A DNA stretch of 64,000 bases from Bigelowiella natans CCMP2755 (Eukaryota; Protista; Cercozoa). The notes below the pieces were generated by a model. It was not told the origin of the DNA and did not search any database. It was given only the letters and a program-made list of their open reading frames with translations. The stretch lies in the NCBI GenBank assembly GCA_000320545.1, contig ADNK01000566.1, positions 1 to 64,000 on the forward strand, written 5' to 3'. The first letter of the stretch is position 1. The number at the start of each line of letters is the position of its first letter. Positions 11,718-23,786 of this stretch are shown piece by piece. The position numbers and the translations under genes were made by a program.

Positions 11718-12964
11718 ATCTCTCTCTTTTGTGTGTGTTCGTGTGTGTGTGTAGAGGAAGAGAGAGAGGAGGGCCGCATAAAGAAATGTATTTGCATCAT
11801 TTTCACTGTATGCATGTGTAGGAAAAACGGAAAAAAGACGAGGAGACCAAGAAAGAGGAGATGAAAAAACTTGAGGAACGCCGAAAAGAGCAGCACAGGT
11901 GTTTCATCAAAAGGAGTACGCACGCGCACTACAAATTCCTTTATACACATGTGCATATATCGTGCGCGCGTGTACCTGTTTGTGGATTTTTCCTCATGTA
12001 TCATGACCGCCCCCACCTCCTCAATTTCATACTACTACTACTACAACTACTGCTTCTACTACTACTTCCTACACAGGAAAATGGCGATAAAGATGGCCCA
12101 AGCTCAGATCAAGAAGAAGCAGAAGAAGGCCCAGAGAGAGAAGGAGCAGCGAGAAAAGGAGGAAGAGGAACAGAAAAAGAAGGAGGAGGAGCAGAAGAAG
12201 CAAGCTGTGATCCGCAAGAAACGCAAGGTATGTTTTAATTACATCACATCGTGCTAAGTGTTGCATCATTTCGGATTGCTATGTAGATACTGAACATTGT
12301 ACAATCGTGCAGCACGAATGCATAGACACACACACACGCACACACTCACGCACACACGCGCGCATGCGGATGGCCAAAAGGGTGTGCACATCACATCATG
12401 AACCGTTGGTGGTTGATCTCATCATCTCCCCATTTGCTATACTCATCACGCTTCCACCTTCTTCTTGCTTTGTTCTTTACGACATCTTGGCCTCTATCCT
12501 GCATCCCTCAGGAAAAGATTAAGAAGTACAAGCAGCAGAAGGCTGAGGAAGAACGGAAGAAGAAAGAACGTGGGTCTAACGATTTGTTACCACACTTTTT
12601 TGTTATATTACGTACCAGGCTGCTACGTCCTGCGCCCGCTCATTGCCCGCAAAAGTACTTTGTACCCTTAATCCCTTTCCGTTGATGTTGCAGAGGAAGA
12701 GAAGATGAAGAAAATAAAGGAGGAGGAACAGAAGAAAAAGATCGCGCTGTATCTGAAGATGAAAAAGGAGAAGGACAAGCTCGAAGCCGCGAAGAAGAAG
12801 GAGATGGAGGCATTGCTGGCCAAACAAAGAGAAGAAGAGGACGCAAAAAAGAAGGAAAAGGAGGCGAGAGAGGTTTGTACAGCAACCCTTTTGCTTCGCT
12901 GCACAACATGTATGAAGCAAATTACAATATGAAAATTTGTATGAATTAGATATGACTATTACTG

Positions 12965-14559: not shown

Positions 14560-15200
14560 CCTGAATTAGTGGCCAGATATACAGCAGCACCATGCTATGA
14601 TCGAATTAGAACTTGGATATGCATCCAAGTCTGTGTGGAGGTAGTTTTAAACTTAGCCCGCGTGCAGTTCGCGATCGAGAATGCTACCTGATTGCCTGCA
14701 TATGGGCTCAATTTTGAGTGTAAACAACAAAGGAAGTCGGACAGCATACCGAACATGCTAGCATGTTACCAGCGCAAGACATGCTCATAAACACTAAATA
14801 TCATAATTATCACCTAGATGTTATATCCCAAGTCGTGTCCATGTGTAGCTAGATATGCAAGCATGCGCACAACGGCTGGACTACTCATTCGCTAGTTTTA
14901 CGCTACAATAATTAGTTGTGCAATAAGCATGCACAATTATTTGTATGATGCAGATCGTGATGAGCGAGCTTGGTGATAAATTATGTTAAATACAGCATGT
15001 GCTAGCGTGCACAAACTAATACATGCGTTACGTGGTTGCATCATTACAATGACGACTAATATAGATTTTTTAAACTAAATAAATAATACAGATTATAATA
15101 ACCGGATTGTGGTTAGCGCGATGCCTCACTAGATACACAAGGAGCTCCCGGCAGAACAACAGATTACCCCGTCGCTTGACCCACAGCTAGCGCAAAAAAG
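14560..15200. other. Convergent intergenic spacer rich in CATG/TGCA/CTAG/AGCT words
   Basis: Examples: catgctagcatg, gtagctagatatgcaagcatgcgc, cagcatgtgctagcgtgcac. It lies between two stop codons. Confidence 0.55.
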
Positions 15201-15228
15201 CTACAGGGCCGTGGTTTTAGTCCGCCTG

Positions 15229-15960
15229 CTACCTATAGCTCGTCCGACTGGACCCCGCGTACACAACAGCATTACTATCGTAGATTGGACGCTTGGCGTC
15301 TGGATGATCCTCGTCCACCACAGCTGCTAGAAGGTCAGAGTCACGGCTCATCATGGCGCGGTGATGGCCACGGCGGCTTGGGGGGGCGCCGCGGGCTTGA
15401 AGCTCTCCCATCACTAGCCAGCGTGTGCACGCACCTCGTATGCACGGCAAGCATGCTGAGATGAAGTCGAGGAGGAGCTTGCGGCCCTGGTGGTACGCGA
15501 AGAAGCAGAGGCATAGGAATAGCGTGCACAGGTACGACATGAGCAGCACCCAGGAGATCGCGCGGCGGAAGTCCTTCTCGGACGTGACCTCGAGAACGAA
15601 GACGATGCTGCACAACCCAACGCGCAGCGCAAAGAGCGCGTTGAGCAGAATGGCCGTGTGGCCGTGCAGATAAGGCTTCTTCACCAAGATAACCTGCAAG
15701 CACGCAGGCTCGATTACAGCATACCGTTACCGCTACAACAACAACAACTACTACTACTACTACTACTATTACTAGTTTACCAAGAACATCGCCGTCTGCA
15801 AGAGGAGGATGAAGACGAGAGACACCACCGAACGGCTCCGGACGGCACCCACCATAATCCCTGTCAGTATCCGCACACAAATGTCCAACACCGCCACGTA
15901 TCGCTGCTCGAATTTGTACCTATAAACACAAGATATTTGTATATGTATGCATATTTATAA

Positions 15961-16001
<41 letters not shown>

Positions 16002-17688
16002 GTACGACTACACTGCTTCGTGAATGGAAAGAAACAACAAAAATGGCACGGAAGTCTTGCCAAAGCACCCTTATTATTACCATCACTAAGATAAGGTGCA
16101 AAATACGTTATCATCACCATCGTCATCATCGTCATCATTATCATCATTAGCACCATCATTAATAGCTTCATCATTTTCATCACTTACATGCGCCAAAAGT
16201 GCCCCCAAATGGCGTTTGAGCGTCCGTGGAGAAATAGATCTATGTATTCTCGGCGAGAAGGTACCTGGAAAGACGGGTGTATTAACTATAAATGAATCCA
16301 TTTGTCTCTGTATCTTCCTTCTCCTCCTTCTAACATTTGTACGATCTCTCTGCGAACGACTTATCATCATCACCATCACCGCCACCACCACCACCACCAC
16401 CACCACCACCACTAGCACCTTGAGGCACAGCTGCACTAGCAGTCCAGCGTACATGAGGAACACCAACAAAATGAAGAAACTCCTGCAGAAACAACAGTAC
16501 GACGAACTCATATTGAATGTGACAAGACGTTGCTTCAATCGCATGCTCTCATGGCATGCGCGCGCGCGCACACACACATGCACACAAACTCGCACTCACA
16601 ACACGTCGTCGACGCAGTGATAGCGGCAGTGAGTGAATGGTGGTAACATGCAAAAGCATACAAACACATTCTTAACATATATGGTTATTTCAATTATAAT
16701 ATGACCCCGCCGCGCAGCTCCCAGAGCCGAGTTCTAGCGAGTACTTGTACGAGGGATTTGAGTAGCAAAAAGACATGAAATACGTCCCTGAAAGCAGCAT
16801 CATCGTGTAAGTAAGTGTGTTGATGATGATAGAAGGATGGTGACATGGTTGTAGTAGACGAGAGAGGAAAGAGAGAGACGAGAGAGGAAGAAGAAGAAAA
16901 AGAAGAAGAAGAAGAAGAAGAGGAGAGATTTTTCCTTTTACCAAGGGAAAAACACGGGTATAGTGCGGTCAGGAGAATGATTGCCAGTCCCTTGTAAAGC
17001 AGCCACCACCTGGTTGTGAATAGGAGAAAGAGACGCACAGATAGACAGGTAGACACAGAGAGAGAGAGGGAGAGGGAGAGGGAGAGGGAGAGAGAGAGAG
17101 AGAAAATGTTAATAAGATGACTTTGAATACTAAATACGTCGTAAGCAGCAGTGCGAACACGGCCAAGATCCATCGATGTTTTTCGTATTAGATCCCAGTA
17201 TTTAAATGTATTATTATTATCTAATATGTTTCGGAGCGGGGCATATGCATACATATAATACCAGTGTATGTCTGCCTGTGCAGTTCGCATGGTGTTGACG
17301 TACGGCGACAGCACACGATTTAGCCCCCACATTCCTACGATGAAGCCCGTGTAGACGGCCGCGGCGAGGACGAAGTTCATCGCTGCGGACTGGGCAAGAT
17401 AATTAGGGTTTATACGGCTCTCGAATGCCAATCGCTCGATGCCAGTCAGCTCGGCGCTTGCGCATTATTTTCCGGGACCATCAGCAGCATAGCGAGACGA
17501 ATGAAACAAAACAAATCCATAGCATGCAGAGGAATATGATGAGGATGATGATGATGAAGAGGAGGAGGAGGAGGAAGAGGAGGAGGAGGAGGAAGAGGAT
17601 GGCAGCATGAGAGAAAGAATATGTGGTGTGGTAATCGAGGAGATTGATAAAGGAGACAAGGAAGCGGACGACGACAATGCAATGAAAC

Positions 17689-17721
<33 letters not shown>

Positions 17722-18374
17722 ATACTAAAAAATCATCATAGCAAATCAAACATTGTTCTGGTTGTTGTTGATTTTTTTTTCCTTGCCGTAGTTACGTGTT
17801 GGCATTCTCGCTAATCTGCTCAATCCCGACTGTCTCCAATGACAATCCAGTGAAAGCCGACAGTATGTGCACGCCAATAGTCCCAACAATGCCTGATCGT
17901 AGTAGAAGTAGTAGTAGTAAGGAGAGGGCTTGCTTCACAACTACGAGTAGTTCCATAGCTGAGCACTTATGATTATTATTAATATCATCCTCCTCCTCCT
18001 TCTGCTTCTTCTTCTTTTTCTTCTTCTTGTTGTTCTTGTTGTTGTTGTTGGTGTAGCAGCACCTGTTGACCAGCCCAGAATATAGTTGAACCGTAGCTGC
18101 GAATACAAGTTGGAGCTATATAGGAAATCAACCTAATGAAGATGATGATGATGATGATGGTGATGATGGTGGTGATGGTGATGATGGTGGTGATGGTGAT
18201 GAGCGTGTGAGCATTAGCGTGAAATATCTGTGCCGCCCACCCAAACCACACCAGCAGAGAAGGATAGCAAAAAGAGAAGGGGATTTCTATATACAGTATA
18301 TAAGTATATACAAATTCTTCCGCCGGGAGCGCACGTGCGTTCAATATAACTGTGCTGCTCTTAACAGACTTTTA

Positions 18375-18405
<31 letters not shown>

Positions 18406-18460
18406 TACTACTACTAATATTGCTACTACCTCCAATAGCATCACGAAGAATTGCGCGATT

Positions 18461-18532
<72 letters not shown>

Positions 18533-18605
18533 GTAAAATAAATACAACCAAATCTCAAGAATAGTACGAAATAACCAACAACAACAGCAATCCACCAATA
18601 TGCAG

Positions 18606-18702
<97 letters not shown>

Positions 18703-18745
18703 AAACTACCAAGGATGGAGGAGATCATCAGGGCGGCAGATTTTG
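15229..18745 (-). other. FLC/fungal Pkd2-like (PF06011 TRP-like) multipass membrane domain coding region
   Basis: Spliced peptides: ISSILEIAQFFVMLLEVDFLYSSNLYSQLRFNYILGWSTG; TGIERLAFESRINPNYL; RWWLLYKGLAIILLTALYP; IWGHFWRMYKFEQRYVAVLDI; LQTAMFLVILVKKPYLHGHT. These follow the order of remembered FLC-family motifs (FQ…W.xG, GIER+AF, W…KG…P, WG.LY, +PY). Confidence 0.65.
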
Positions 18746-20307
18746 CAGAGTACTGTTTCCTCATTGTCGTGGTGGTGGAGGTGCGAACGATGTTGTGCTG
18801 CTGCTGCTGCTGGTGGTGGTGGTGGCGCTTATACGGATCTTCTAAGTGTCCCACAAAGCGAGCCCTTACCGGACGATGGTCACTAATCGTGCATTCCTCC
18901 ACGCTCTCATAGCCGCATGGAACAAACGCCTTGAGATGGCGGTTTCCAGTGCTGCTTTTTGGAGAAGAAGAGGAGGAGGACGAAGAAGCTGGCGACACCG
19001 TCCCTTCCACCTTTGCATACGATGACGACGATAACCCCGACTGACAACCTCCTATCTCACTCCCTTCCGCATCCTTGTCAGTACGGAGAGAGCGGTGATG
19101 ATGGGGATTGTTTTTGTGTTGCTCACCGTCACCTCGAATGCGGTAGAAGATGCGGTCGGTCCAACCAGGAATTCTGATGATGTTGTAACGGCATATATCA
19201 TCATTATCACCACCATCAATCTTGTAGCTGTGGTATTGTTGTTCGGAGTATTTATCACTACTGGAACTACTAAAACGTTAGATATTGGTGGATATTGGGA
19301 TTTTAAAATGATCGTACGTCGACGACACTACTGATCGATTATAGTAGAGAAGGAGGGCCAAAGACACACACACCACTCATACCTCGCAGTGCTATATTCC
19401 AGTCCTTGTGCTGCCAGCCCTTTAGCAACCATATCGTCGTCGTAAGACAAAGTTTGCCCGCTTGTCATCTGCTCTTCCTTCTTCTCGTCCATCCCCTCTA
19501 AATCTACAACATTATCACCACGACTCCCCTCCCCATTCCCCATTTTATCATCATCATCAATCACAGGTTCCGACGAGCTTTTCTTCTTCATAGGCATCTG
19601 AAGAGCCCGCTTGTAGGTCGGCGCAAATTCAATGCGGCCCGCTTCTCTTAGTCCGCCGTCCGTGAATGCCTCGTTACGCGCACGTGCAATTGTCAGCTGG
19701 TCTTTAGAAAGAAGCTCCGAGAACTTGCGTTGGGAGATGAGTTTCACGGCTCGTGAGAAGGCGGTTTTGGGAAAGTCGAGCCGATAGTTGAGGTCCCCAA
19801 GCCATATCAATAGATCGCCGTCCAGGAGTCCGCAGGCGGAGAAATTTCCATCGAAAAACCACATGTTCCTGTGTGTGGGGGGGGTCGGGGGGTTGGTGGT
19901 CATCAGCAATTTCCTCCTTCATAGGAAGAATGTTATCTCTTCCCCTCAACCCTCTCTATGTTTCTCCCTCGAAAAAAGATATTTAAATTTACCACTTCCT
20001 TTTCTTCTCGCAACCAACACTACCACTACCACGAGCACTCGCTATTTCCACTGCGGCCTCTGCATCATTTATTTATTTATGTATTAATTACTCGAGAATA
20101 TCACGATAATTCCGGTTCCTCTTTGTCACTTTTTCGAGATGAGCTGCAAGGTGGGCATTGACGAACACGAATGTGGCGTCGAAGACGCATAGGCGACATG
20201 CAACCTGTTTCATCATCATAATGATAACAACTTGGATCAGTGGAGAACAGAGATGGATGCTGTCCGAGCTACGTACGTAGGAGAAGACATCGCAATGTAC
20301 ACAAACG

Positions 20308-20346
<39 letters not shown>

Positions 20347-20553
20347 CGCAACACACACCGCGCCCTTGTTTCCGAGCCGGCCAACCCCGACACCTTGATT
20401 TATTGAGGCATTCCACAATGTAAGGCATCATATATTAGACCGTTCTTCTTCAAAACAGAATTTGGGATACAAAAAAAGAACAGTAGCAAGATATTTTCTA
20501 ATCTGGGCCTGGACATATATCGACAGTAGAGATGAGTGAGAAGGCACGTGTGC

Positions 20554-20593
<40 letters not shown>

Positions 20594-20785
20594 CCAAGGT
20601 GGTCAGTTTGGATCTCAGAGACATACGGGAACATATCAGTACGGACATAAACCAGGAGGAGAATGCCTACCAGCTGCTGAATGCATACCTTCATGTACCT
20701 TGATATATTATACGTAATAATAACAACCCCAACCTTAGAAAATGATCACACACCACACACACACACACCTCATACATAATGATAC

Positions 20786-20835
<50 letters not shown>

Positions 20836-21870
20836 GGAAGGGGGGGGGATAGAGAGTGGAAACGCGCCATACATATAAGTGTATGAAAGAGTACAATGGT
20901 CTCATCAGTATCTATAGTAACCCCGGGTTCGTCGCATCACGATTATTGTCATTCCTTCGGTTGAGGATAATCTGCTCAATCAGGTTCTCCCATGGTAACG
21001 CGGCGTGATGCGGTCGAATGGCGACATTCAAGGGATTCAAATCCACTACCTATGCACACAACACACACCAACTTTGGTGAAGAGATCCAGTATTACAACG
21101 TCTGTGTGGAAAATAAGATGTGCTTCATGATAACCACAACAATTATCAACACTTTACAATCTTATTATCAATAACAACTAACACCTCCTGGAGTCGATGA
21201 CATAGATGTCAGGCGGACTTAGCTGTCCCGTTTCGTGTCGAGAGTGACGCAGCGCATCTTCTGCTCCCCCATCGCAAGGGAATCCTGCACCCACATTCCA
21301 GGTGATGGCGCAAATGTCGAATTTCAGTAGAGTGTTTCCGCTCTGCATAGGAGAAAGGACACAATCATTGAATTGGGAATGCAAACACAGCTGCCAGATC
21401 GGAAATTCAGGGCCTTAACACTGCTCGCAAACTTATGCGGCCCCACATGTGCAGATAAAGTAAAAGTACAAACCTGCACTTCACCGGAAGGTGCTTCACC
21501 GTAAGGTGCGACGAAGCGAGAGAGTCTCCTGGTTATCAATGGCTGACGCTTTTCCATTGCAGGTTCAAATTCGTCAGACCGCTGCCAACATATCAAAACC
21601 ACGGTTTCTATTACAACCTTTTCATGAAACAATACTCTATTTTAAGTACCCCCAGATGGCGGCCTTGTACCGTTGAACCCGACGCCTTCCTTTTACCACC
21701 GCTTTGTTTAAAAGCGGCATCAAGTCAGCAGAGGAGGAGAAGAGAGAAAAAACAGAAGAACGATCTACATCCAAACAATCTATTCCCTCCGGTATTTGTC
21801 AATTAAAGGGAGGAGCGACCTGCTTGCTCTTCTCCGTAGCACCGTGACGACGAAGGGGCAGACGGAACCT
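15229..21870 (-). CDS. Putative inositol polyphosphate 5-phosphatase fused to a C-terminal FLC/TRP-like multipass membrane domain (multi-exon; 5' end approximate)
   Basis: 5-phosphatase motifs appear in order: ITWNVG, PDIYVI(GLQE)-VVDL, QLVGILLLVYV, GVGRLGNKGA, FVFVNAHLAAH…RNRNY, WLGDLNYRL, DQL, FAPTYK, PGWTDRI, SDHRPV. The same exon (19270-18710) runs on without a stop and splices in phase into membrane exons ending at the stop at 15229. Confidence 0.7.
18860..21345 (-). other. Inositol polyphosphate 5-phosphatase catalytic domain (IPPc) coding region
   Basis: Signature motifs TWNV, GNKG, NAHLAA, GDLNYR, PxWTDRI and SDHRPV are all present across exons. Confidence 0.93.
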
Positions 21871-22105
21871 GGTTGATGAGAATACAGGAATACCCGAGGC
21901 TGCTCGCTCGGCGAATCGAAGGGACTACGACGTTAATTTGCAGTCGCGACAACATTATCCCTGTGTCGCAAACCTGTAATCCCATGTCGCATGTTATGTC
22001 CGCTAATAACAATAATTATTAGAGCTACAACGTAGATACTAGGTCTAATATTCGGTACAGTAACCCCTACCACCTACGGCGTGCGTGGTGCATCTATAGA
22101 GTCTC

Positions 22106-23786
22106 ATGCAGGCCGGAGAATCATCCTGTATCCCCCTTCTTGGCACCCTCTCCGACGAGGCGGGGGAGAAGAAGATGAAGAAGGGTCTGTTCTTATTGCG
22201 GTCTACGGTGATGTTTGTAATTCTTGCCCTCATCAATTTGGGATTGCTTCTCCTGGCTGCAGCGTACTCCACTTTCGAGGGCCGGTAGATAAGTTTTCGC
22301 CTACCTTAGAATGTAGATGCCTGCCAAACTCACAGAATTATCAAATCAGGCAAGAATTCTTCTCTCTCGCATTGCTGGCTTGGACCTTTGGTCTGAGGCA
22401 TGCAGTTGACGCCGACCACATCGCTGCCATAGATAATGTGACACGCAAGCTTGTCGGCCAGGTTAGAATCCCTTGTTTTAGTCGTGTATACGAATGTAAT
22501 ATCTTCTGGTCATTTTCAAAACTGTTATGGCGTAACAGGGCCAGATTCCCGTTTCAGTTGGACTTATGTTTGGAATTGGTGAGCCAACATTAAATTATAC
22601 TGACTTCATTCTTAGCAGATTTTTTGTTATCAGGGCACTCTTTTATGGTTCTAGTGATATCCTGTATCACAATTGTATCTGCTGCAACACTTCGAGGGAT
22701 GGAGGGTCCTCTCGCCGGTAGCAAATCATTCATTCGATCGTCTTCATAGCACTGAACCACTCTTCTTTCGACTCAGACTTCGGACGGCTTATCGGAACAT
22801 TATTCTCAGCCATTGTCCTGCTAGTGTTGGGAATTCTAAATGTGATATTATTTTTATCACTCCTAATGGAGGACAAAAATGCCCAGCCAGGATCGGGAAA
22901 CAGTAATGGCAGCATGGATGGTGGTTGCTTCACCAGGTGTCTCTCAGGAGCCTTTCGGTTAGTGGATAGCCCTTGGAAGATGTTTTTCTTGGGACTGGTG
23001 TTCAGTTTGAGTTTCGATACCTCTACCGAAGTTGCTCTCCTTGTATTGATCGCGGAAAAGCCGATCGTGAGTGGCAAGACTTCTTCATCTGCCGAGGCAG
23101 CCAAAGGTTTTGGTGATAAATTCAATATCTCATGTACAATATGATACCGATTTTACTATAACGATAGACGTACAGTGGATGATAACTACGAGGTTTCCTT
23201 TAATTATCTCAGAAAATGGCTCTGTAGGCGGATGGCAAGTTGCAATGGCCATGGTCTTGCCGCTCCTTTTTGCTGCTGGAATGACAATAATTGATGCAGC
23301 CGATGGAGTTGGCATGGCCTGGGCCTACGCGTATGGTCAAGAACGCAGCCATCAGCGTCGAATGTACAATCTTATCATCACAGGAGTATCCGCCTTCGTA
23401 GCTTTGGGACTGGGGGTGCTGGAGGTATTGCAGGTCATCGCTGAACGTATGGATTGGCATGGTGGGATTTTCTGGGAAACGGTGGAGTCACTCGACCCAG
23501 GAGCTATGGTAAAAACTGCTGAAGATTGAGGATTGTTTTTACGTTTCAATGTCGCCCTGAAAATCTAAATGATATTGAATATTAGGGTTACGCCGTACTT
23601 GCGATGTTCGGTATTCTGATATTCACTGCTGTAATCTACGAGACCTTTACACACTACTCCGGGGTCCGGAAAACGACACTTGATGAGGAAGTATCACCCA
23701 CCACAGCAGATTACCAGAGCCTCGAAGATCATACCCCCGATGCTATCATTGAATCGTCAGAAAAGAAATATAAAGATCGTGTCTAG
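22106..23786 (+). CDS. High-affinity nickel/cobalt transporter, NiCoT (HoxN/NixA/Nic1) family; about 6 exons
   Basis: Signature LAWTFGLRHAVDADHIAAIDNVTRKL; PVSVGLMFGIGHS; LVFSLSFDTSTEVALL; LPLLFAAGMTIIDAADG; YNLIITGVS. Exon 1 is 22106-22284, exon 2 is 22350-22461, and the stop is at 23786. Confidence 0.93.

What the first reader, a model, noticed from the sequence alone, without database searches (positions are those of the whole stretch)
15229..21345. Inositol 5-phosphatase fused in frame to an FLC/TRP-like membrane domain: a candidate phosphoinositide 'chanzyme'
Seen in sequence: the exon carrying PGWTDRI and SDHRPV (19270-18710) continues without a stop through HHHHQQQQQ…MRKQYSAKSAALMISSIL. 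It then joins, by phase-compatible GT-AG junctions, exons 18461-18430 (EIAQFFVMLLE), 18132-18063 (VDFLYSSNLYSQLRFNYILGWSTG), 17892-17796 and 17456 onward (AELTGIERLAFESRINPNYL…). Later exons give WWLLYKGLAIILL…YP, WGHFWRMYK…Y and VKKPY. No intergenic-type DNA separates the two halves. Established knowledge: fungal FLC/Pkd2 proteins normally have a signal peptide, a luminal ML-like domain and TM1 before the FQ…W.xG segment. Inference: here that N-terminal part seems replaced by the phosphatase, which would place the enzyme on the cytosolic face next to PI(4,5)P2/IP3. That resembles voltage-sensing phosphatases or TRPM chanzymes but with a different domain pair. I do not recall this architecture being described.
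Basis: partly seen in the sequence, partly recalled or inferred. Interest (0 to 1): 0.88.

Follow-up and report, generated by a model that had tools for sequence, protein, structure and literature searches.

The report
Inositol 5-phosphatase fused to FLC/Pkd2-type membrane domain
In the alga Bigelowiella natans one 18-exon gene encodes a lipid-signal phosphatase joined to the membrane part of a fungal-type "TRP-like" putative calcium channel; the pairing recurs in a second gene copy and in related organisms, I found no description of it, and it hints that these two protein families work together.

Summary
On the minus strand, 18 GT-AG exons (21557-15229) give one 954-aa protein. It has an N-terminal inositol polyphosphate 5-phosphatase with no signal peptide and all catalytic motifs, nearest OCRL/INPP5B. 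A roughly 40-residue linker follows, then about 8 membrane helices that pass Pfam's cut-off for PF06011 (fungal FLC/Pkd2 "TRP"), then a Cys-rich tail.

The last catalytic motif, the linker and the start of helix 1 lie in one exon (19173-18710). A transcript contig confirms every later junction at 100% identity.

No single RNA contig spans both halves. All assemblies break at a 36-nt CAC/CAG stretch (18830-18795) that another expressed gene shares.

The fusion is independently shown elsewhere:
- A B. natans paralog (JGI model 82716) has SDHRPV, linker, helix 1 and the next loop in one genomic exon.
- Transcript contigs from two other samples carry the same continuous reading frame.

- The junction exon starts at 19173, not 19270.
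- The coding sequence starts at 21557.
- The assembly has an indel cluster in exon 2 that RNA contigs lack.

Channel activity and enzyme-channel coupling are untested. No paper describing this architecture was found. I rate it a new variant of a known kind.

The parts
21474..21557 (-). Exon 1: start codon (21557) and the first 28 codons. The N-terminus is hydrophilic and basic, with no signal peptide. The 5'UTR runs on beyond 21569.
   Evidence: RNA joint 21474->21342 in three runs; translation; GT donor.
21185..21342 (-). Exon 2: WNVG and GLQE catalytic motifs. The assembly carries a cluster of indels here (21195-21266, plus one missing base near 21195) that break the frame. The RNA contigs are intact.
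   Evidence: Tables 4, 5 and 5c; reconstruction.
20922..21049 (-). Exon 3 (VVDLNPLNVAIRP...)
   Evidence: RNA joints; GT-AG.
20595..20698 (-). Exon 4 (YMKVCIQQLVGILLLVYV...)
   Evidence: Weak PF22669 match; RNA joint at 20698. The 3' border is set by GT-AG and by homology to P0002.
20359..20393 (-). Exon 5 (GRLGNKGA motif)
   Evidence: GT-AG and collinearity with P0002. The joint itself is not among the rows listed.
20092..20204 (-). Exon 6 (VNAHLAAH catalytic His motif)
   Evidence: PF22669 at 25.4 bits; RNA contig piece 20095-20204.
19383..19868 (-). Exon 7 (GDLNYRL, FAPTYK; an acidic low-complexity insert)
   Evidence: PF22669 at 52.6 bits; best PDB match is OCRL-1, E 7.9e-10; RNA contig piece.
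18710..19173 (-). Exon 8, the junction exon. It holds RIPGWTDRIFY, a Ser-rich insert, SDHRPV, the His/Gln/Thr linker, and the start of membrane helix 1 (SAALMISSIL).
   Evidence: RNA joint 19383->19173; L016 covers 18830-18710 and splices to 18461; open frame.
18795..18830 (-). A 36-nt CAC/CAG low-complexity stretch, shared almost exactly with a PPR gene on contig C484. Every RNA assembly breaks or goes chimeric at this point.
18430..18461 (-). Exon 9 (EIAQFFVMLLE; the rest of helix 1)
   Evidence: L016 at 100% identity; GT-AG.
18063..18132 (-). Exon 10 (NYILGWSTG loop)
   Evidence: L016; the loose end of the Logan contig at 17895 matches this exon.
17796..17892 (-). Exon 11
   Evidence: L016; RNA joint 17796<-17456.
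17262..17456 (-). Exon 12 (GIERLAFES...NPNYL, helix 2)
16942..17009 (-). Exon 13 (helix 3)
16706..16787 (-). Exon 14 (outer loop with two invariant Cys)
16419..16482 (-). Exon 15 (helix 4)
16188..16264 (-). Exon 16 (basic inner loop with the invariant WGHFWR)
15781..15919 (-). Exon 17 (helices 5 and 6)
15229..15693 (-). Exon 18 coding part (helices 7 and 8, YHQGRK, the Cys cluster, the tail, and the stop codon at 15231-15229)
15046..15228 (-). 3'UTR as far as transcript contig L016 reaches

Best explanation
One gene makes one polytopic membrane protein of about 954 residues.

Its N-terminal 475 or so residues are a catalytically complete type-II-like (OCRL/INPP5B/synaptojanin-like) inositol polyphosphate 5-phosphatase, which faces the cytosol. 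A short linker ties it to helix 1 of an approximately 8-helix FLC/Pkd2-type domain (Pfam PF06011). That domain has lost the signal peptide, the outer lipid-binding (ML-like) domain and probably the first helix of its fungal relatives. A Cys-rich tail also faces the cytosol.

Most likely mechanism: the membrane domain fixes the phosphatase at the inner face of one particular membrane. There it removes the 5-phosphate of PI(4,5)P2 (perhaps also PIP3 or InsP3) in the immediate surroundings of the FLC/Pkd2-type domain. Lipid turnover and whatever that domain senses or conducts (Ca2+ or membrane stretch in fungi) would then be tied together.

Status of each step:
- Shown: gene structure, transcription of all exons, domain identities, and conservation of the fusion in a paralog and in two other samples.
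- Inferred: topology, substrate, and any coupling.
For: - Gene structure: 18 GT-AG exons, with the frame open across both halves.
- Junction: the junction exon holds SDHRPV, the linker and the start of helix 1.
- Contig ends: the phosphatase contigs appear to end 32-35 letters beyond 18833 (these letters were not displayed). Membrane-half contigs (Logan's, by length arithmetic) and L016 (by alignment) begin at 18821-18830, both inside a 36-nt stretch shared with another gene.
- Depth: the 5' membrane contig and the phosphatase contig have similar depth (56.8 vs 60.7 in X1; 85.1 vs 67.4 in X3), rising toward the 3' end.
- Paralog: the model aligns to P0002 in one collinear stretch over 882 columns covering both domains. 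In the paralog the junction is inside a single genomic exon.
- Other samples: L017 and L021 show the same continuous reading frame.
- Phosphatase identity: PF22669 matches exon by exon and scores 217 bits in the paralog. All catalytic motifs are present. The nearest solved structures are OCRL-1 and INPP5B.
- Membrane-domain identity: PF06011 scores above its cut-off and the nearest Atlas clusters carry PF06011.
- Topology hints: 8 hydrophobic helices; a basic inner loop (5-7 Lys/Arg); two invariant Cys in a putative outer loop; a Cys cluster after the last helix.
Against: - No single read or contig was seen crossing 18795-18830 at this locus.
- The assembly's exon 2 is frameshifted. That would make this a pseudogene if the DNA rather than the RNA were right.
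- The paralog itself does not reach any PF06011 score.
- The AlphaFold model of the membrane half is unusable (pLDDT 42.7), so no fold-level check was possible.
- The positive-inside bias is only modest.
- One extra weakly hydrophobic segment (model residues 560-578), absent from the paralog, would flip the tail to the outside if it spans the membrane.
- The biochemical role of PF06011 proteins (channel, flavin or heme carrier, lipid homeostasis) is itself unsettled.
Confidence: 0.7

Rival explanations
1. Anchor only. The fusion is real, but the FLC/Pkd2-type domain neither conducts nor senses anything. It is just a multi-helix anchor or sorting device that holds a constitutive 5-phosphatase in one compartment (for example ER, plasma membrane or periplastidal membranes).
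For: - No pore or gating feature could be tested, because there was no usable model and no PDB relative.
- The N-terminal outer domain that fungal studies find essential is missing (bioRxiv 10.1101/2022.08.11.503631).
- PF06011 proteins have been assigned several non-channel roles (PMC9600462).
Against: - A single helix would be enough for anchoring. Instead about 350 residues of membrane domain are conserved across two paralogs and other samples, with invariant loop motifs (WGHFWR, YHQGRK, a Cys pair).
- Fission-yeast Pkd2 is reported as Ca2+-permeable and stretch-activated after reconstitution (PMC9727806, abstract).
Confidence: 0.3
2. Two products from one locus. The phosphatase mRNA ends, or a second promoter fires, inside exon 8. 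The membrane protein would then be made on its own from the MRKQY ATG (about 18775), and the continuous reading frame would be incidental.
For: - There is an in-frame Met 17 codons (18775 against 18724) before helix 1.
- All assemblies break at 18795-18830.
- The 3'-most membrane contigs are 1.4-1.9 times deeper than the phosphatase contig.
Against: - The break point coincides with a 36-nt stretch shared with another expressed gene, which forces a de Bruijn assembler to stop or to make a chimera such as L016.
- L016, and apparently the Logan membrane contigs (by length arithmetic), extend upstream of the ATG into the linker.
- The membrane contig nearest the junction has about the same depth as the phosphatase contig.
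- The paralog and L017/L021 have no Met in the linker and have uninterrupted frames.
- The phosphatase frame has no stop before 18558, and no poly(A)-type end was reported (table 6).
Confidence: 0.08
3. Artefact or pseudogene. Either the assembly joined two genes wrongly, or the gene is dead because exon 2 is frameshifted.
For: The genome-only model hits a stop at codon 82. The assembly differs from RNA by six small differences within about 75 nt.
Against: - RNA contigs from three studies carry an intact exon 2 and are expressed at depths of 60-150.
- The rest of the locus matches RNA at 99.9-100%.
- The same architecture exists at a second locus and in other samples.
Confidence: 0.03

Closest known systems
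Fungal FLC/Pkd2 'TRP-like' proteins (Pfam PF06011: S. cerevisiae Flc1-3, S. pombe Pkd2/Trp663/Trp1322, C. neoformans Flc1)
   Same: The membrane half passes the PF06011 gathering score over profile positions 120-396. It has multiple helices followed by a cytosol-type tail.
   Different: - No signal peptide and no ML-like/TRP_N outer domain.
- About 8 helices rather than the 9 reported.
- A 475-residue cytosolic enzyme takes the place of the outer domain.
- The host is a rhizarian alga, not a fungus.
Type II inositol polyphosphate 5-phosphatases (OCRL-1, INPP5B, synaptojanin, yeast Inp51-53)
   Same: The catalytic fold family is PF22669. All catalytic motifs are present, and the best PDB matches are 4cmn and 3mtc.
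   Different: - No ASH/RhoGAP, Sac1 or SKICH partner domains.
- Two long low-complexity inserts.
- Covalently tied to a polytopic membrane domain, whereas the known enzymes are peripheral proteins recruited by adaptors.
Oomycete/Nannochloropsis GPCR-INPP 'bigrams' (PMC5784254, PMC6033456)
   Same: A polytopic membrane domain and an inositol polyphosphate phosphatase in one polypeptide, in a protist. The function is untested in both cases.
   Different: - There the 7-helix GPCR is N-terminal and the phosphatase C-terminal. Here the phosphatase is N-terminal and the membrane domain is FLC/Pkd2-type.
- There is no sequence relation between the membrane parts.
Voltage-sensing phosphatases (Ci-VSP) and TRPM2/6/7 'chanzymes' (from general knowledge)
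   Same: The idea is the same: a sensor or channel module joined covalently to an enzyme acting on a signalling molecule. For VSP that molecule is a phosphoinositide.
   Different: - VSP has a 4-helix voltage sensor plus a PTEN-type phosphatase.
- TRPM chanzymes have a 6-helix TRP pore plus a kinase or NUDT9 domain.
- None of these domains is present here, so the resemblance is functional analogy only.

Membership tests
Inositol polyphosphate 5-phosphatase (PF22669 Exo_endo_phos2 / IPPc) | Profile match above the curated cut-off (27 bits) | tested here: met
   Exon 7 alone scores 52.6 bits. Exons 6 and 8 score 25-26 bits each. The paralog P0002 scores 217.5 bits. The joined model was not submitted to this tool.
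Inositol polyphosphate 5-phosphatase (PF22669 Exo_endo_phos2 / IPPc) | Catalytic motifs WNVG, GLQE, GNKGA, N-x-H, GDLNYR, P-x-W-x-DRI, SDHRPV | tested here: met
   All were found in order at model residues 43, 79, 167, 187, 233, 374 and 468. GLQE is intact only in the RNA version of exon 2.
Inositol polyphosphate 5-phosphatase (PF22669 Exo_endo_phos2 / IPPc) | 5-phosphatase activity on PI(4,5)P2, PIP3 or InsP3 | not testable with these tools
   Needs an enzyme assay.
FLC/Pkd2 'TRP' family (PF06011) | Profile match above the curated cut-off (28.5 bits) | tested here: met
   39.8 bits, E 3.4e-10, for the natural transcript translation L016:658-2064, which is identical to the window's exons. 42.9 bits for the 87%-identical P0001. 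The single exons give nothing, and the paralog P0002 gives no hit.
FLC/Pkd2 'TRP' family (PF06011) | N-terminal signal peptide plus outer ML-like/TRP_N lipid-binding domain (typical of the family, but absent from fungal subgroup B per PMC9600462) | tested here: not met
   There is no PF14558 or PF02221 hit in any piece. The N-terminus is a cytosolic-type phosphatase.
FLC/Pkd2 'TRP' family (PF06011) | Nine membrane helices with a cytosolic C-tail (AlphaFold-based description of S. pombe Pkd2) | tested here: inconclusive
   Hydropathy gives 8 strong segments, plus one weak one in this copy only. The AlphaFold model was too poor to count helices.
Canonical 6-helix TRP/polycystin channels (PF00520, PF08016) | Match to the ion-transport or PKD-channel profiles, or to solved TRP/PKD2 structures | tested here: not met
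   Only PF06011 is reported by Pfam at E<=1. A profile search of the PDB finds no membrane-protein hit.
Chanzyme (channel plus enzyme in one chain) | Demonstrated ion conduction by the membrane part | not testable with these tools
   Needs electrophysiology or flux assays.

The most novel reading that the evidence does not exclude
The protein is a true phosphoinositide 'chanzyme' or sensor-enzyme. A stretch- or Ca2+-responsive Pkd2/FLC-type channel would gate its own covalently attached PI(4,5)P2 5-phosphatase, or be shut off by it. That would be a mechanical or osmotic counterpart of the voltage-sensing phosphatase. As a Rosetta-stone fusion it would also reveal that fungal FLC/Pkd2 proteins work with synaptojanin-type 5-phosphatases.
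Probability: 0.25. Interest if true: 0.85.

Novelty: new variant of a known kind. Interest (0 to 1): 0.62.

Why it matters
PF06011 proteins (yeast Flc1-3, fission-yeast Pkd2) are essential or important in fungi, including pathogens. Their molecular job is still disputed.

A conserved natural fusion to a PI(4,5)P2-type 5-phosphatase is a 'Rosetta stone' clue that this family acts together with phosphoinositide turnover. It fits two separate fungal observations:
- Eisosomes recruit the 5-phosphatase Inp51 (PMC4161514).
- Tail-less Pkd2 clusters in eisosomes (bioRxiv 10.1101/2022.08.11.503631).

The fusion also adds a new domain pair to the short list of membrane sensor or channel modules joined covalently to lipid-signalling enzymes (VSP, GPCR-PIPK/INPP, TRPM chanzymes). 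It gives a compact, testable construct for asking whether an FLC-type domain can control an enzyme.

Tried and rejected
- Pfam on single membrane-half exons gave no hits; the pieces are too short.
- Pfam on helix 1 plus the first loop alone, from three homologs, gave no hits. The mapping of helix 1 to fungal helix 2 therefore stays an inference.
- A six-frame PF06011 search of the own genome found nothing, and the controls were silent too, so it is uninformative.
- Word-based protein searches found only P0001, P0002, P0005 and P0006. The one exhaustive representative search used only the last exon and found 4 proteins. The taxonomic range beyond these is therefore unknown.
- AlphaFold2 on the membrane half with a 4-sequence alignment gave pLDDT 42.7. 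I judged it unusable and ran no fold search.
- A PDB profile search gave no hit for the membrane half.
- The Atlas search with the paralog returned only ordinary 5-phosphatase clusters and no large cluster with both domains.
- I considered the loose contig ends at 17916, 18988 and 16311 as alternative 5' exons. I rejected this for 17916 and 18988: they are partial low-complexity matches of transcripts from contig C2867. The 16311 end was judged the same by eye, without a search.
- I considered the PPR-TRP protein P0005 as a different real fusion. I rejected it as an assembly chimera through a shared 36-nt stretch; its front half maps to contig C484.
- I rejected the pseudogene reading of the exon-2 frameshift because the RNA contigs are intact.
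- Raw-read run X21 laid only 4 reads and gave no information.
- Joined step: the spliced 954-aa model was assembled only inside local scripts from window coordinates and L016. It was not typed or sent to any database, family or folding tool.


Full report
**Organism and locus**

Earlier notes of this scan name the genome as Bigelowiella natans. I confirmed this in part. A protein labelled jgi/Bigna1/82716 and EukProt Bigelowiella_natans (P0002) maps at 100% identity, in most of its exons, to contig C608 of the window's own assembly.

The finding lies on the minus strand. Its upstream neighbour, on the other strand from about 22081, is a NicO nickel-transporter gene. The locus is therefore bounded there.

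**Gene structure**

Six-frame reading, RNA contigs laid on 15570-21569 and a spliced transcript contig (L016) give 18 exons. All have GT-AG borders:

| Exon | Coordinates | Exon | Coordinates |
|---|---|---|---|
| 1 | 21557-21474 | 10 | 18132-18063 |
| 2 | 21342-21185 | 11 | 17892-17796 |
| 3 | 21049-20922 | 12 | 17456-17262 |
| 4 | 20698-20595 | 13 | 17009-16942 |
| 5 | 20393-20359 | 14 | 16787-16706 |
| 6 | 20204-20092 | 15 | 16482-16419 |
| 7 | 19868-19383 | 16 | 16264-16188 |
| 8 | 19173-18710 | 17 | 15919-15781 |
| 9 | 18461-18430 | 18 | 15693-15229 |

The 3'UTR reaches about 15046.

From exon 3 to the stop codon, the genome-only spliced sequence is a single open frame of 872 codons covering both halves. 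With the RNA version of exon 2, the protein has 954 residues.

Two corrections apply to the phosphatase half:
- The junction exon starts at 19173, not 19270, because 19382-19174 is an intron.

**Exon 2 discrepancy**

In 21195-21266, the RNA contigs of three runs from three studies differ from the assembly by four one-base insertions and one deletion. At the exon's 3' end they differ by one more base and one substitution (tables 4, 5 and 5c).

As assembled, the DNA reads ...VIDSRRC-stop. The RNA reads ...VIGLQEVVDLN, which is the canonical 5-phosphatase motif. Everything else in about 4 kb of exons matches at 99.9-100%. I take this as a local assembly error, or less likely another allele. It is not a dead gene.

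**Is it one transcript?**

The junction exon (19173-18710) holds, in one frame:
- RIPGWTDRIFY;
- a Ser-rich insert;
- SDHRPV;
- a His/Gln/Thr-rich linker;
- the first ten residues of membrane helix 1.

Phosphatase contigs run from beyond 21569 down to 18833, plus 32-35 further letters (table 8). Those extra letters were not displayed.

Membrane-half contigs carry 213-214 letters upstream of 17895. The first 30 of these match exon 10. By arithmetic (67+32+115), they end near 18824.

L016, a JGI transcript contig, is identical to the window from 18830 through all the splices to 15046.

So both sets of contigs end inside 18830-18795. That stretch is a CAC/CAG run which occurs almost identically in a PPR gene on contig C484. 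L016 is in fact a chimera of that PPR transcript and this one, joined exactly there. A k-mer assembler has to break or mis-join at such a node, so the break says nothing about the RNA.

Depths agree with one mRNA showing 3' bias:

| Run | Phosphatase contig | Next membrane contig | 3' end |
|---|---|---|---|
| X1 | 60.7 | 56.8 | 94.2 |
| X3 | 67.4 | 85.1 | 125.1 |

This step is therefore strong inference, not observation.

**Independent proof of the architecture**

The only other membrane-half locus in the genome lies on C608. It is JGI model 82716 (P0002, 856 aa). Its residues 376-497 are encoded by one uninterrupted genomic exon (C608 9730-10095). That exon contains SDHRPV (residue 423), a 22-residue linker with no Met, helix 1 (AQFFVMLLE at 465) and the NYILGWSTG loop (489).

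My model aligns to P0002 in one collinear stretch of 882 columns at 37% identity, across both domains.

Two transcript contigs from other JGI/MMETSP samples also carry a single reading frame. It runs from phosphatase motifs through SDHRPV, linker, helix 1 and the following loop. The rest of the membrane domain sits downstream, after retained introns (L017 3180 nt and L021 1848 nt).

The fusion therefore predates the duplication and is conserved in at least two further organisms. From their similarity, and from the MMETSP source of one of them, I assume they are chlorarachniophytes, but that is not shown.

**Phosphatase half**

- PF22669 matches exon by exon: 52.6 bits for exon 7, and 25-26 bits for exons 6 and 8.
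- All catalytic motifs are present and in order.
- The best solved relatives are OCRL-1 (4cmn), INPP5B (3mtc) and synaptojanin.
- The FAPTYK and R-IPGW positions are kept. From my memory of the INPP5B structural work, these contact the 4-phosphate. I therefore expect 4,5-phosphorylated substrates; this is inference.
- There is no signal peptide, so the domain should be cytosolic.

**Membrane half**

- The natural translation L016:658-2064, which is identical to the window's exons, scores 39.8 bits (E 3.4e-10, cut-off 28.5) on PF06011 'TRP' over profile positions 120-396 of 426.
- The 87%-identical environmental relative P0001 scores 42.9 bits.
- A language-model feature search places P0001 next to PF06011 clusters from oomycetes, ciliates and ascomycetes, with a top score of 0.95.
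- No TRP_N/ML-like hit exists anywhere in the protein.
- Hydropathy gives 8 strong helices, plus one weak segment in this copy that the paralog lacks.
- Fission-yeast Pkd2 is described as signal peptide, outer lipid-binding domain, nine helices and a cytosolic tail (bioRxiv 10.1101/2022.08.11.503631).
- Supporting hints, all modest: a basic loop between helices 4 and 5 with the invariant WGHFWR; two invariant Cys in the helix 3-4 loop; a Cys cluster after the last helix.
- Helix 1 plus its loop gives no Pfam match alone, the AlphaFold model was unusable, and there is no PDB relative. The fold-level picture is therefore untested.

**Mechanism**

My best reading is a 5-phosphatase permanently tethered, by a linker of 20-40 residues, to the cytosolic mouth of an FLC/Pkd2-type domain. 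It would deplete PI(4,5)P2 locally.

Fungal Pkd2 is reported to be Ca2+-permeable and stretch-activated (PMC9727806, abstract), and many channels need PI(4,5)P2. A feedback or sensor-effector arrangement is therefore plausible but unproven.

The sober rival is that the membrane domain is only an anchor. The two-product and artefact readings are unlikely, for the reasons given above.

**Comparison with known systems and novelty**

Both domains are known families. The protein meets the profile tests for each, but it lacks the N-terminal module typical of fungal FLC proteins. It is not a canonical 6-helix TRP channel.

Functional analogues:
- oomycete and Nannochloropsis GPCR-INPP bigrams, which have the opposite domain order and a different membrane domain (PMC5784254, PMC6033456);
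- voltage-sensing phosphatases;
- TRPM chanzymes.

Full-text searches for PF06011, for 5-phosphatase with chlorarachniophyte, and for 5-phosphatase, TRP, chanzyme and fusion found no description of this pairing. The paralog sits in public databases only as an unnamed JGI gene model, and the precomputed Pfam domains list only PF22669 for it. I rate it a new variant of a known kind.

**Method note**

The joined 954-aa sequence was built only inside local scripts and was not sent to any search or folding tool.

Noticed in passing
window 21185-21270 (minus strand, exon 2): A cluster of small differences between the assembly and the RNA contigs of three studies: four 1-base insertions, one deletion, one further missing base and one substitution. 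It breaks the reading frame in the DNA as assembled. The rest of the gene matches RNA almost perfectly. It is probably a local assembly error, and it may explain why I found no public gene model for this locus.
   Followed up: partly
window 18795-18830; G000:C484 about 18119-18256 (L015 1507-1601): A 36-nt CAC/CAG coding stretch is shared almost exactly between this gene and an unrelated PPR-repeat gene on another contig. It produced a chimeric public transcript contig and protein (L016/P0005, 'PPR+TRP'). Domain architectures taken from such assemblies can be false.
   Followed up: yes
window 22081-22593 (+ strand): The neighbouring gene, on the opposite strand and head to head with this one, has a NicO high-affinity nickel-transporter match (PF03824, 50 bits).
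   Followed up: partly
window 15700-21200, introns: Nearly every intron of this gene is filled with long microsatellites: (CT)n, (GT)n, (AT)n, (CAT)n, (TAC)n, (GGT)n. Several of them keep an open reading frame by chance, and they also caused spurious partial read matches from other loci (17916, 18988, 16311).
   Followed up: partly
window 20998: All three RNA runs read G where the + strand of the assembly has A. This could be a strain or allele difference, or an assembly error. No DNA run was checked.
   Followed up: no
L017 1925-2012 and about 2780-2870; L021 about 1018-1183: The related organisms' transcript contigs keep short retained introns inside the membrane domain. L021 also seems to skip about 170 codons (helices 2-6). 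These look like unprocessed or alternatively spliced forms.
   Followed up: no
G000:C608 about 11900-12000 vs P0003: The MMETSP transcript-derived C-terminus of the paralog (P0003) differs from the fgenesh model's C-terminus (P0002) after '...TRWIAQG'. The public model's last exon is probably wrong.
   Followed up: no
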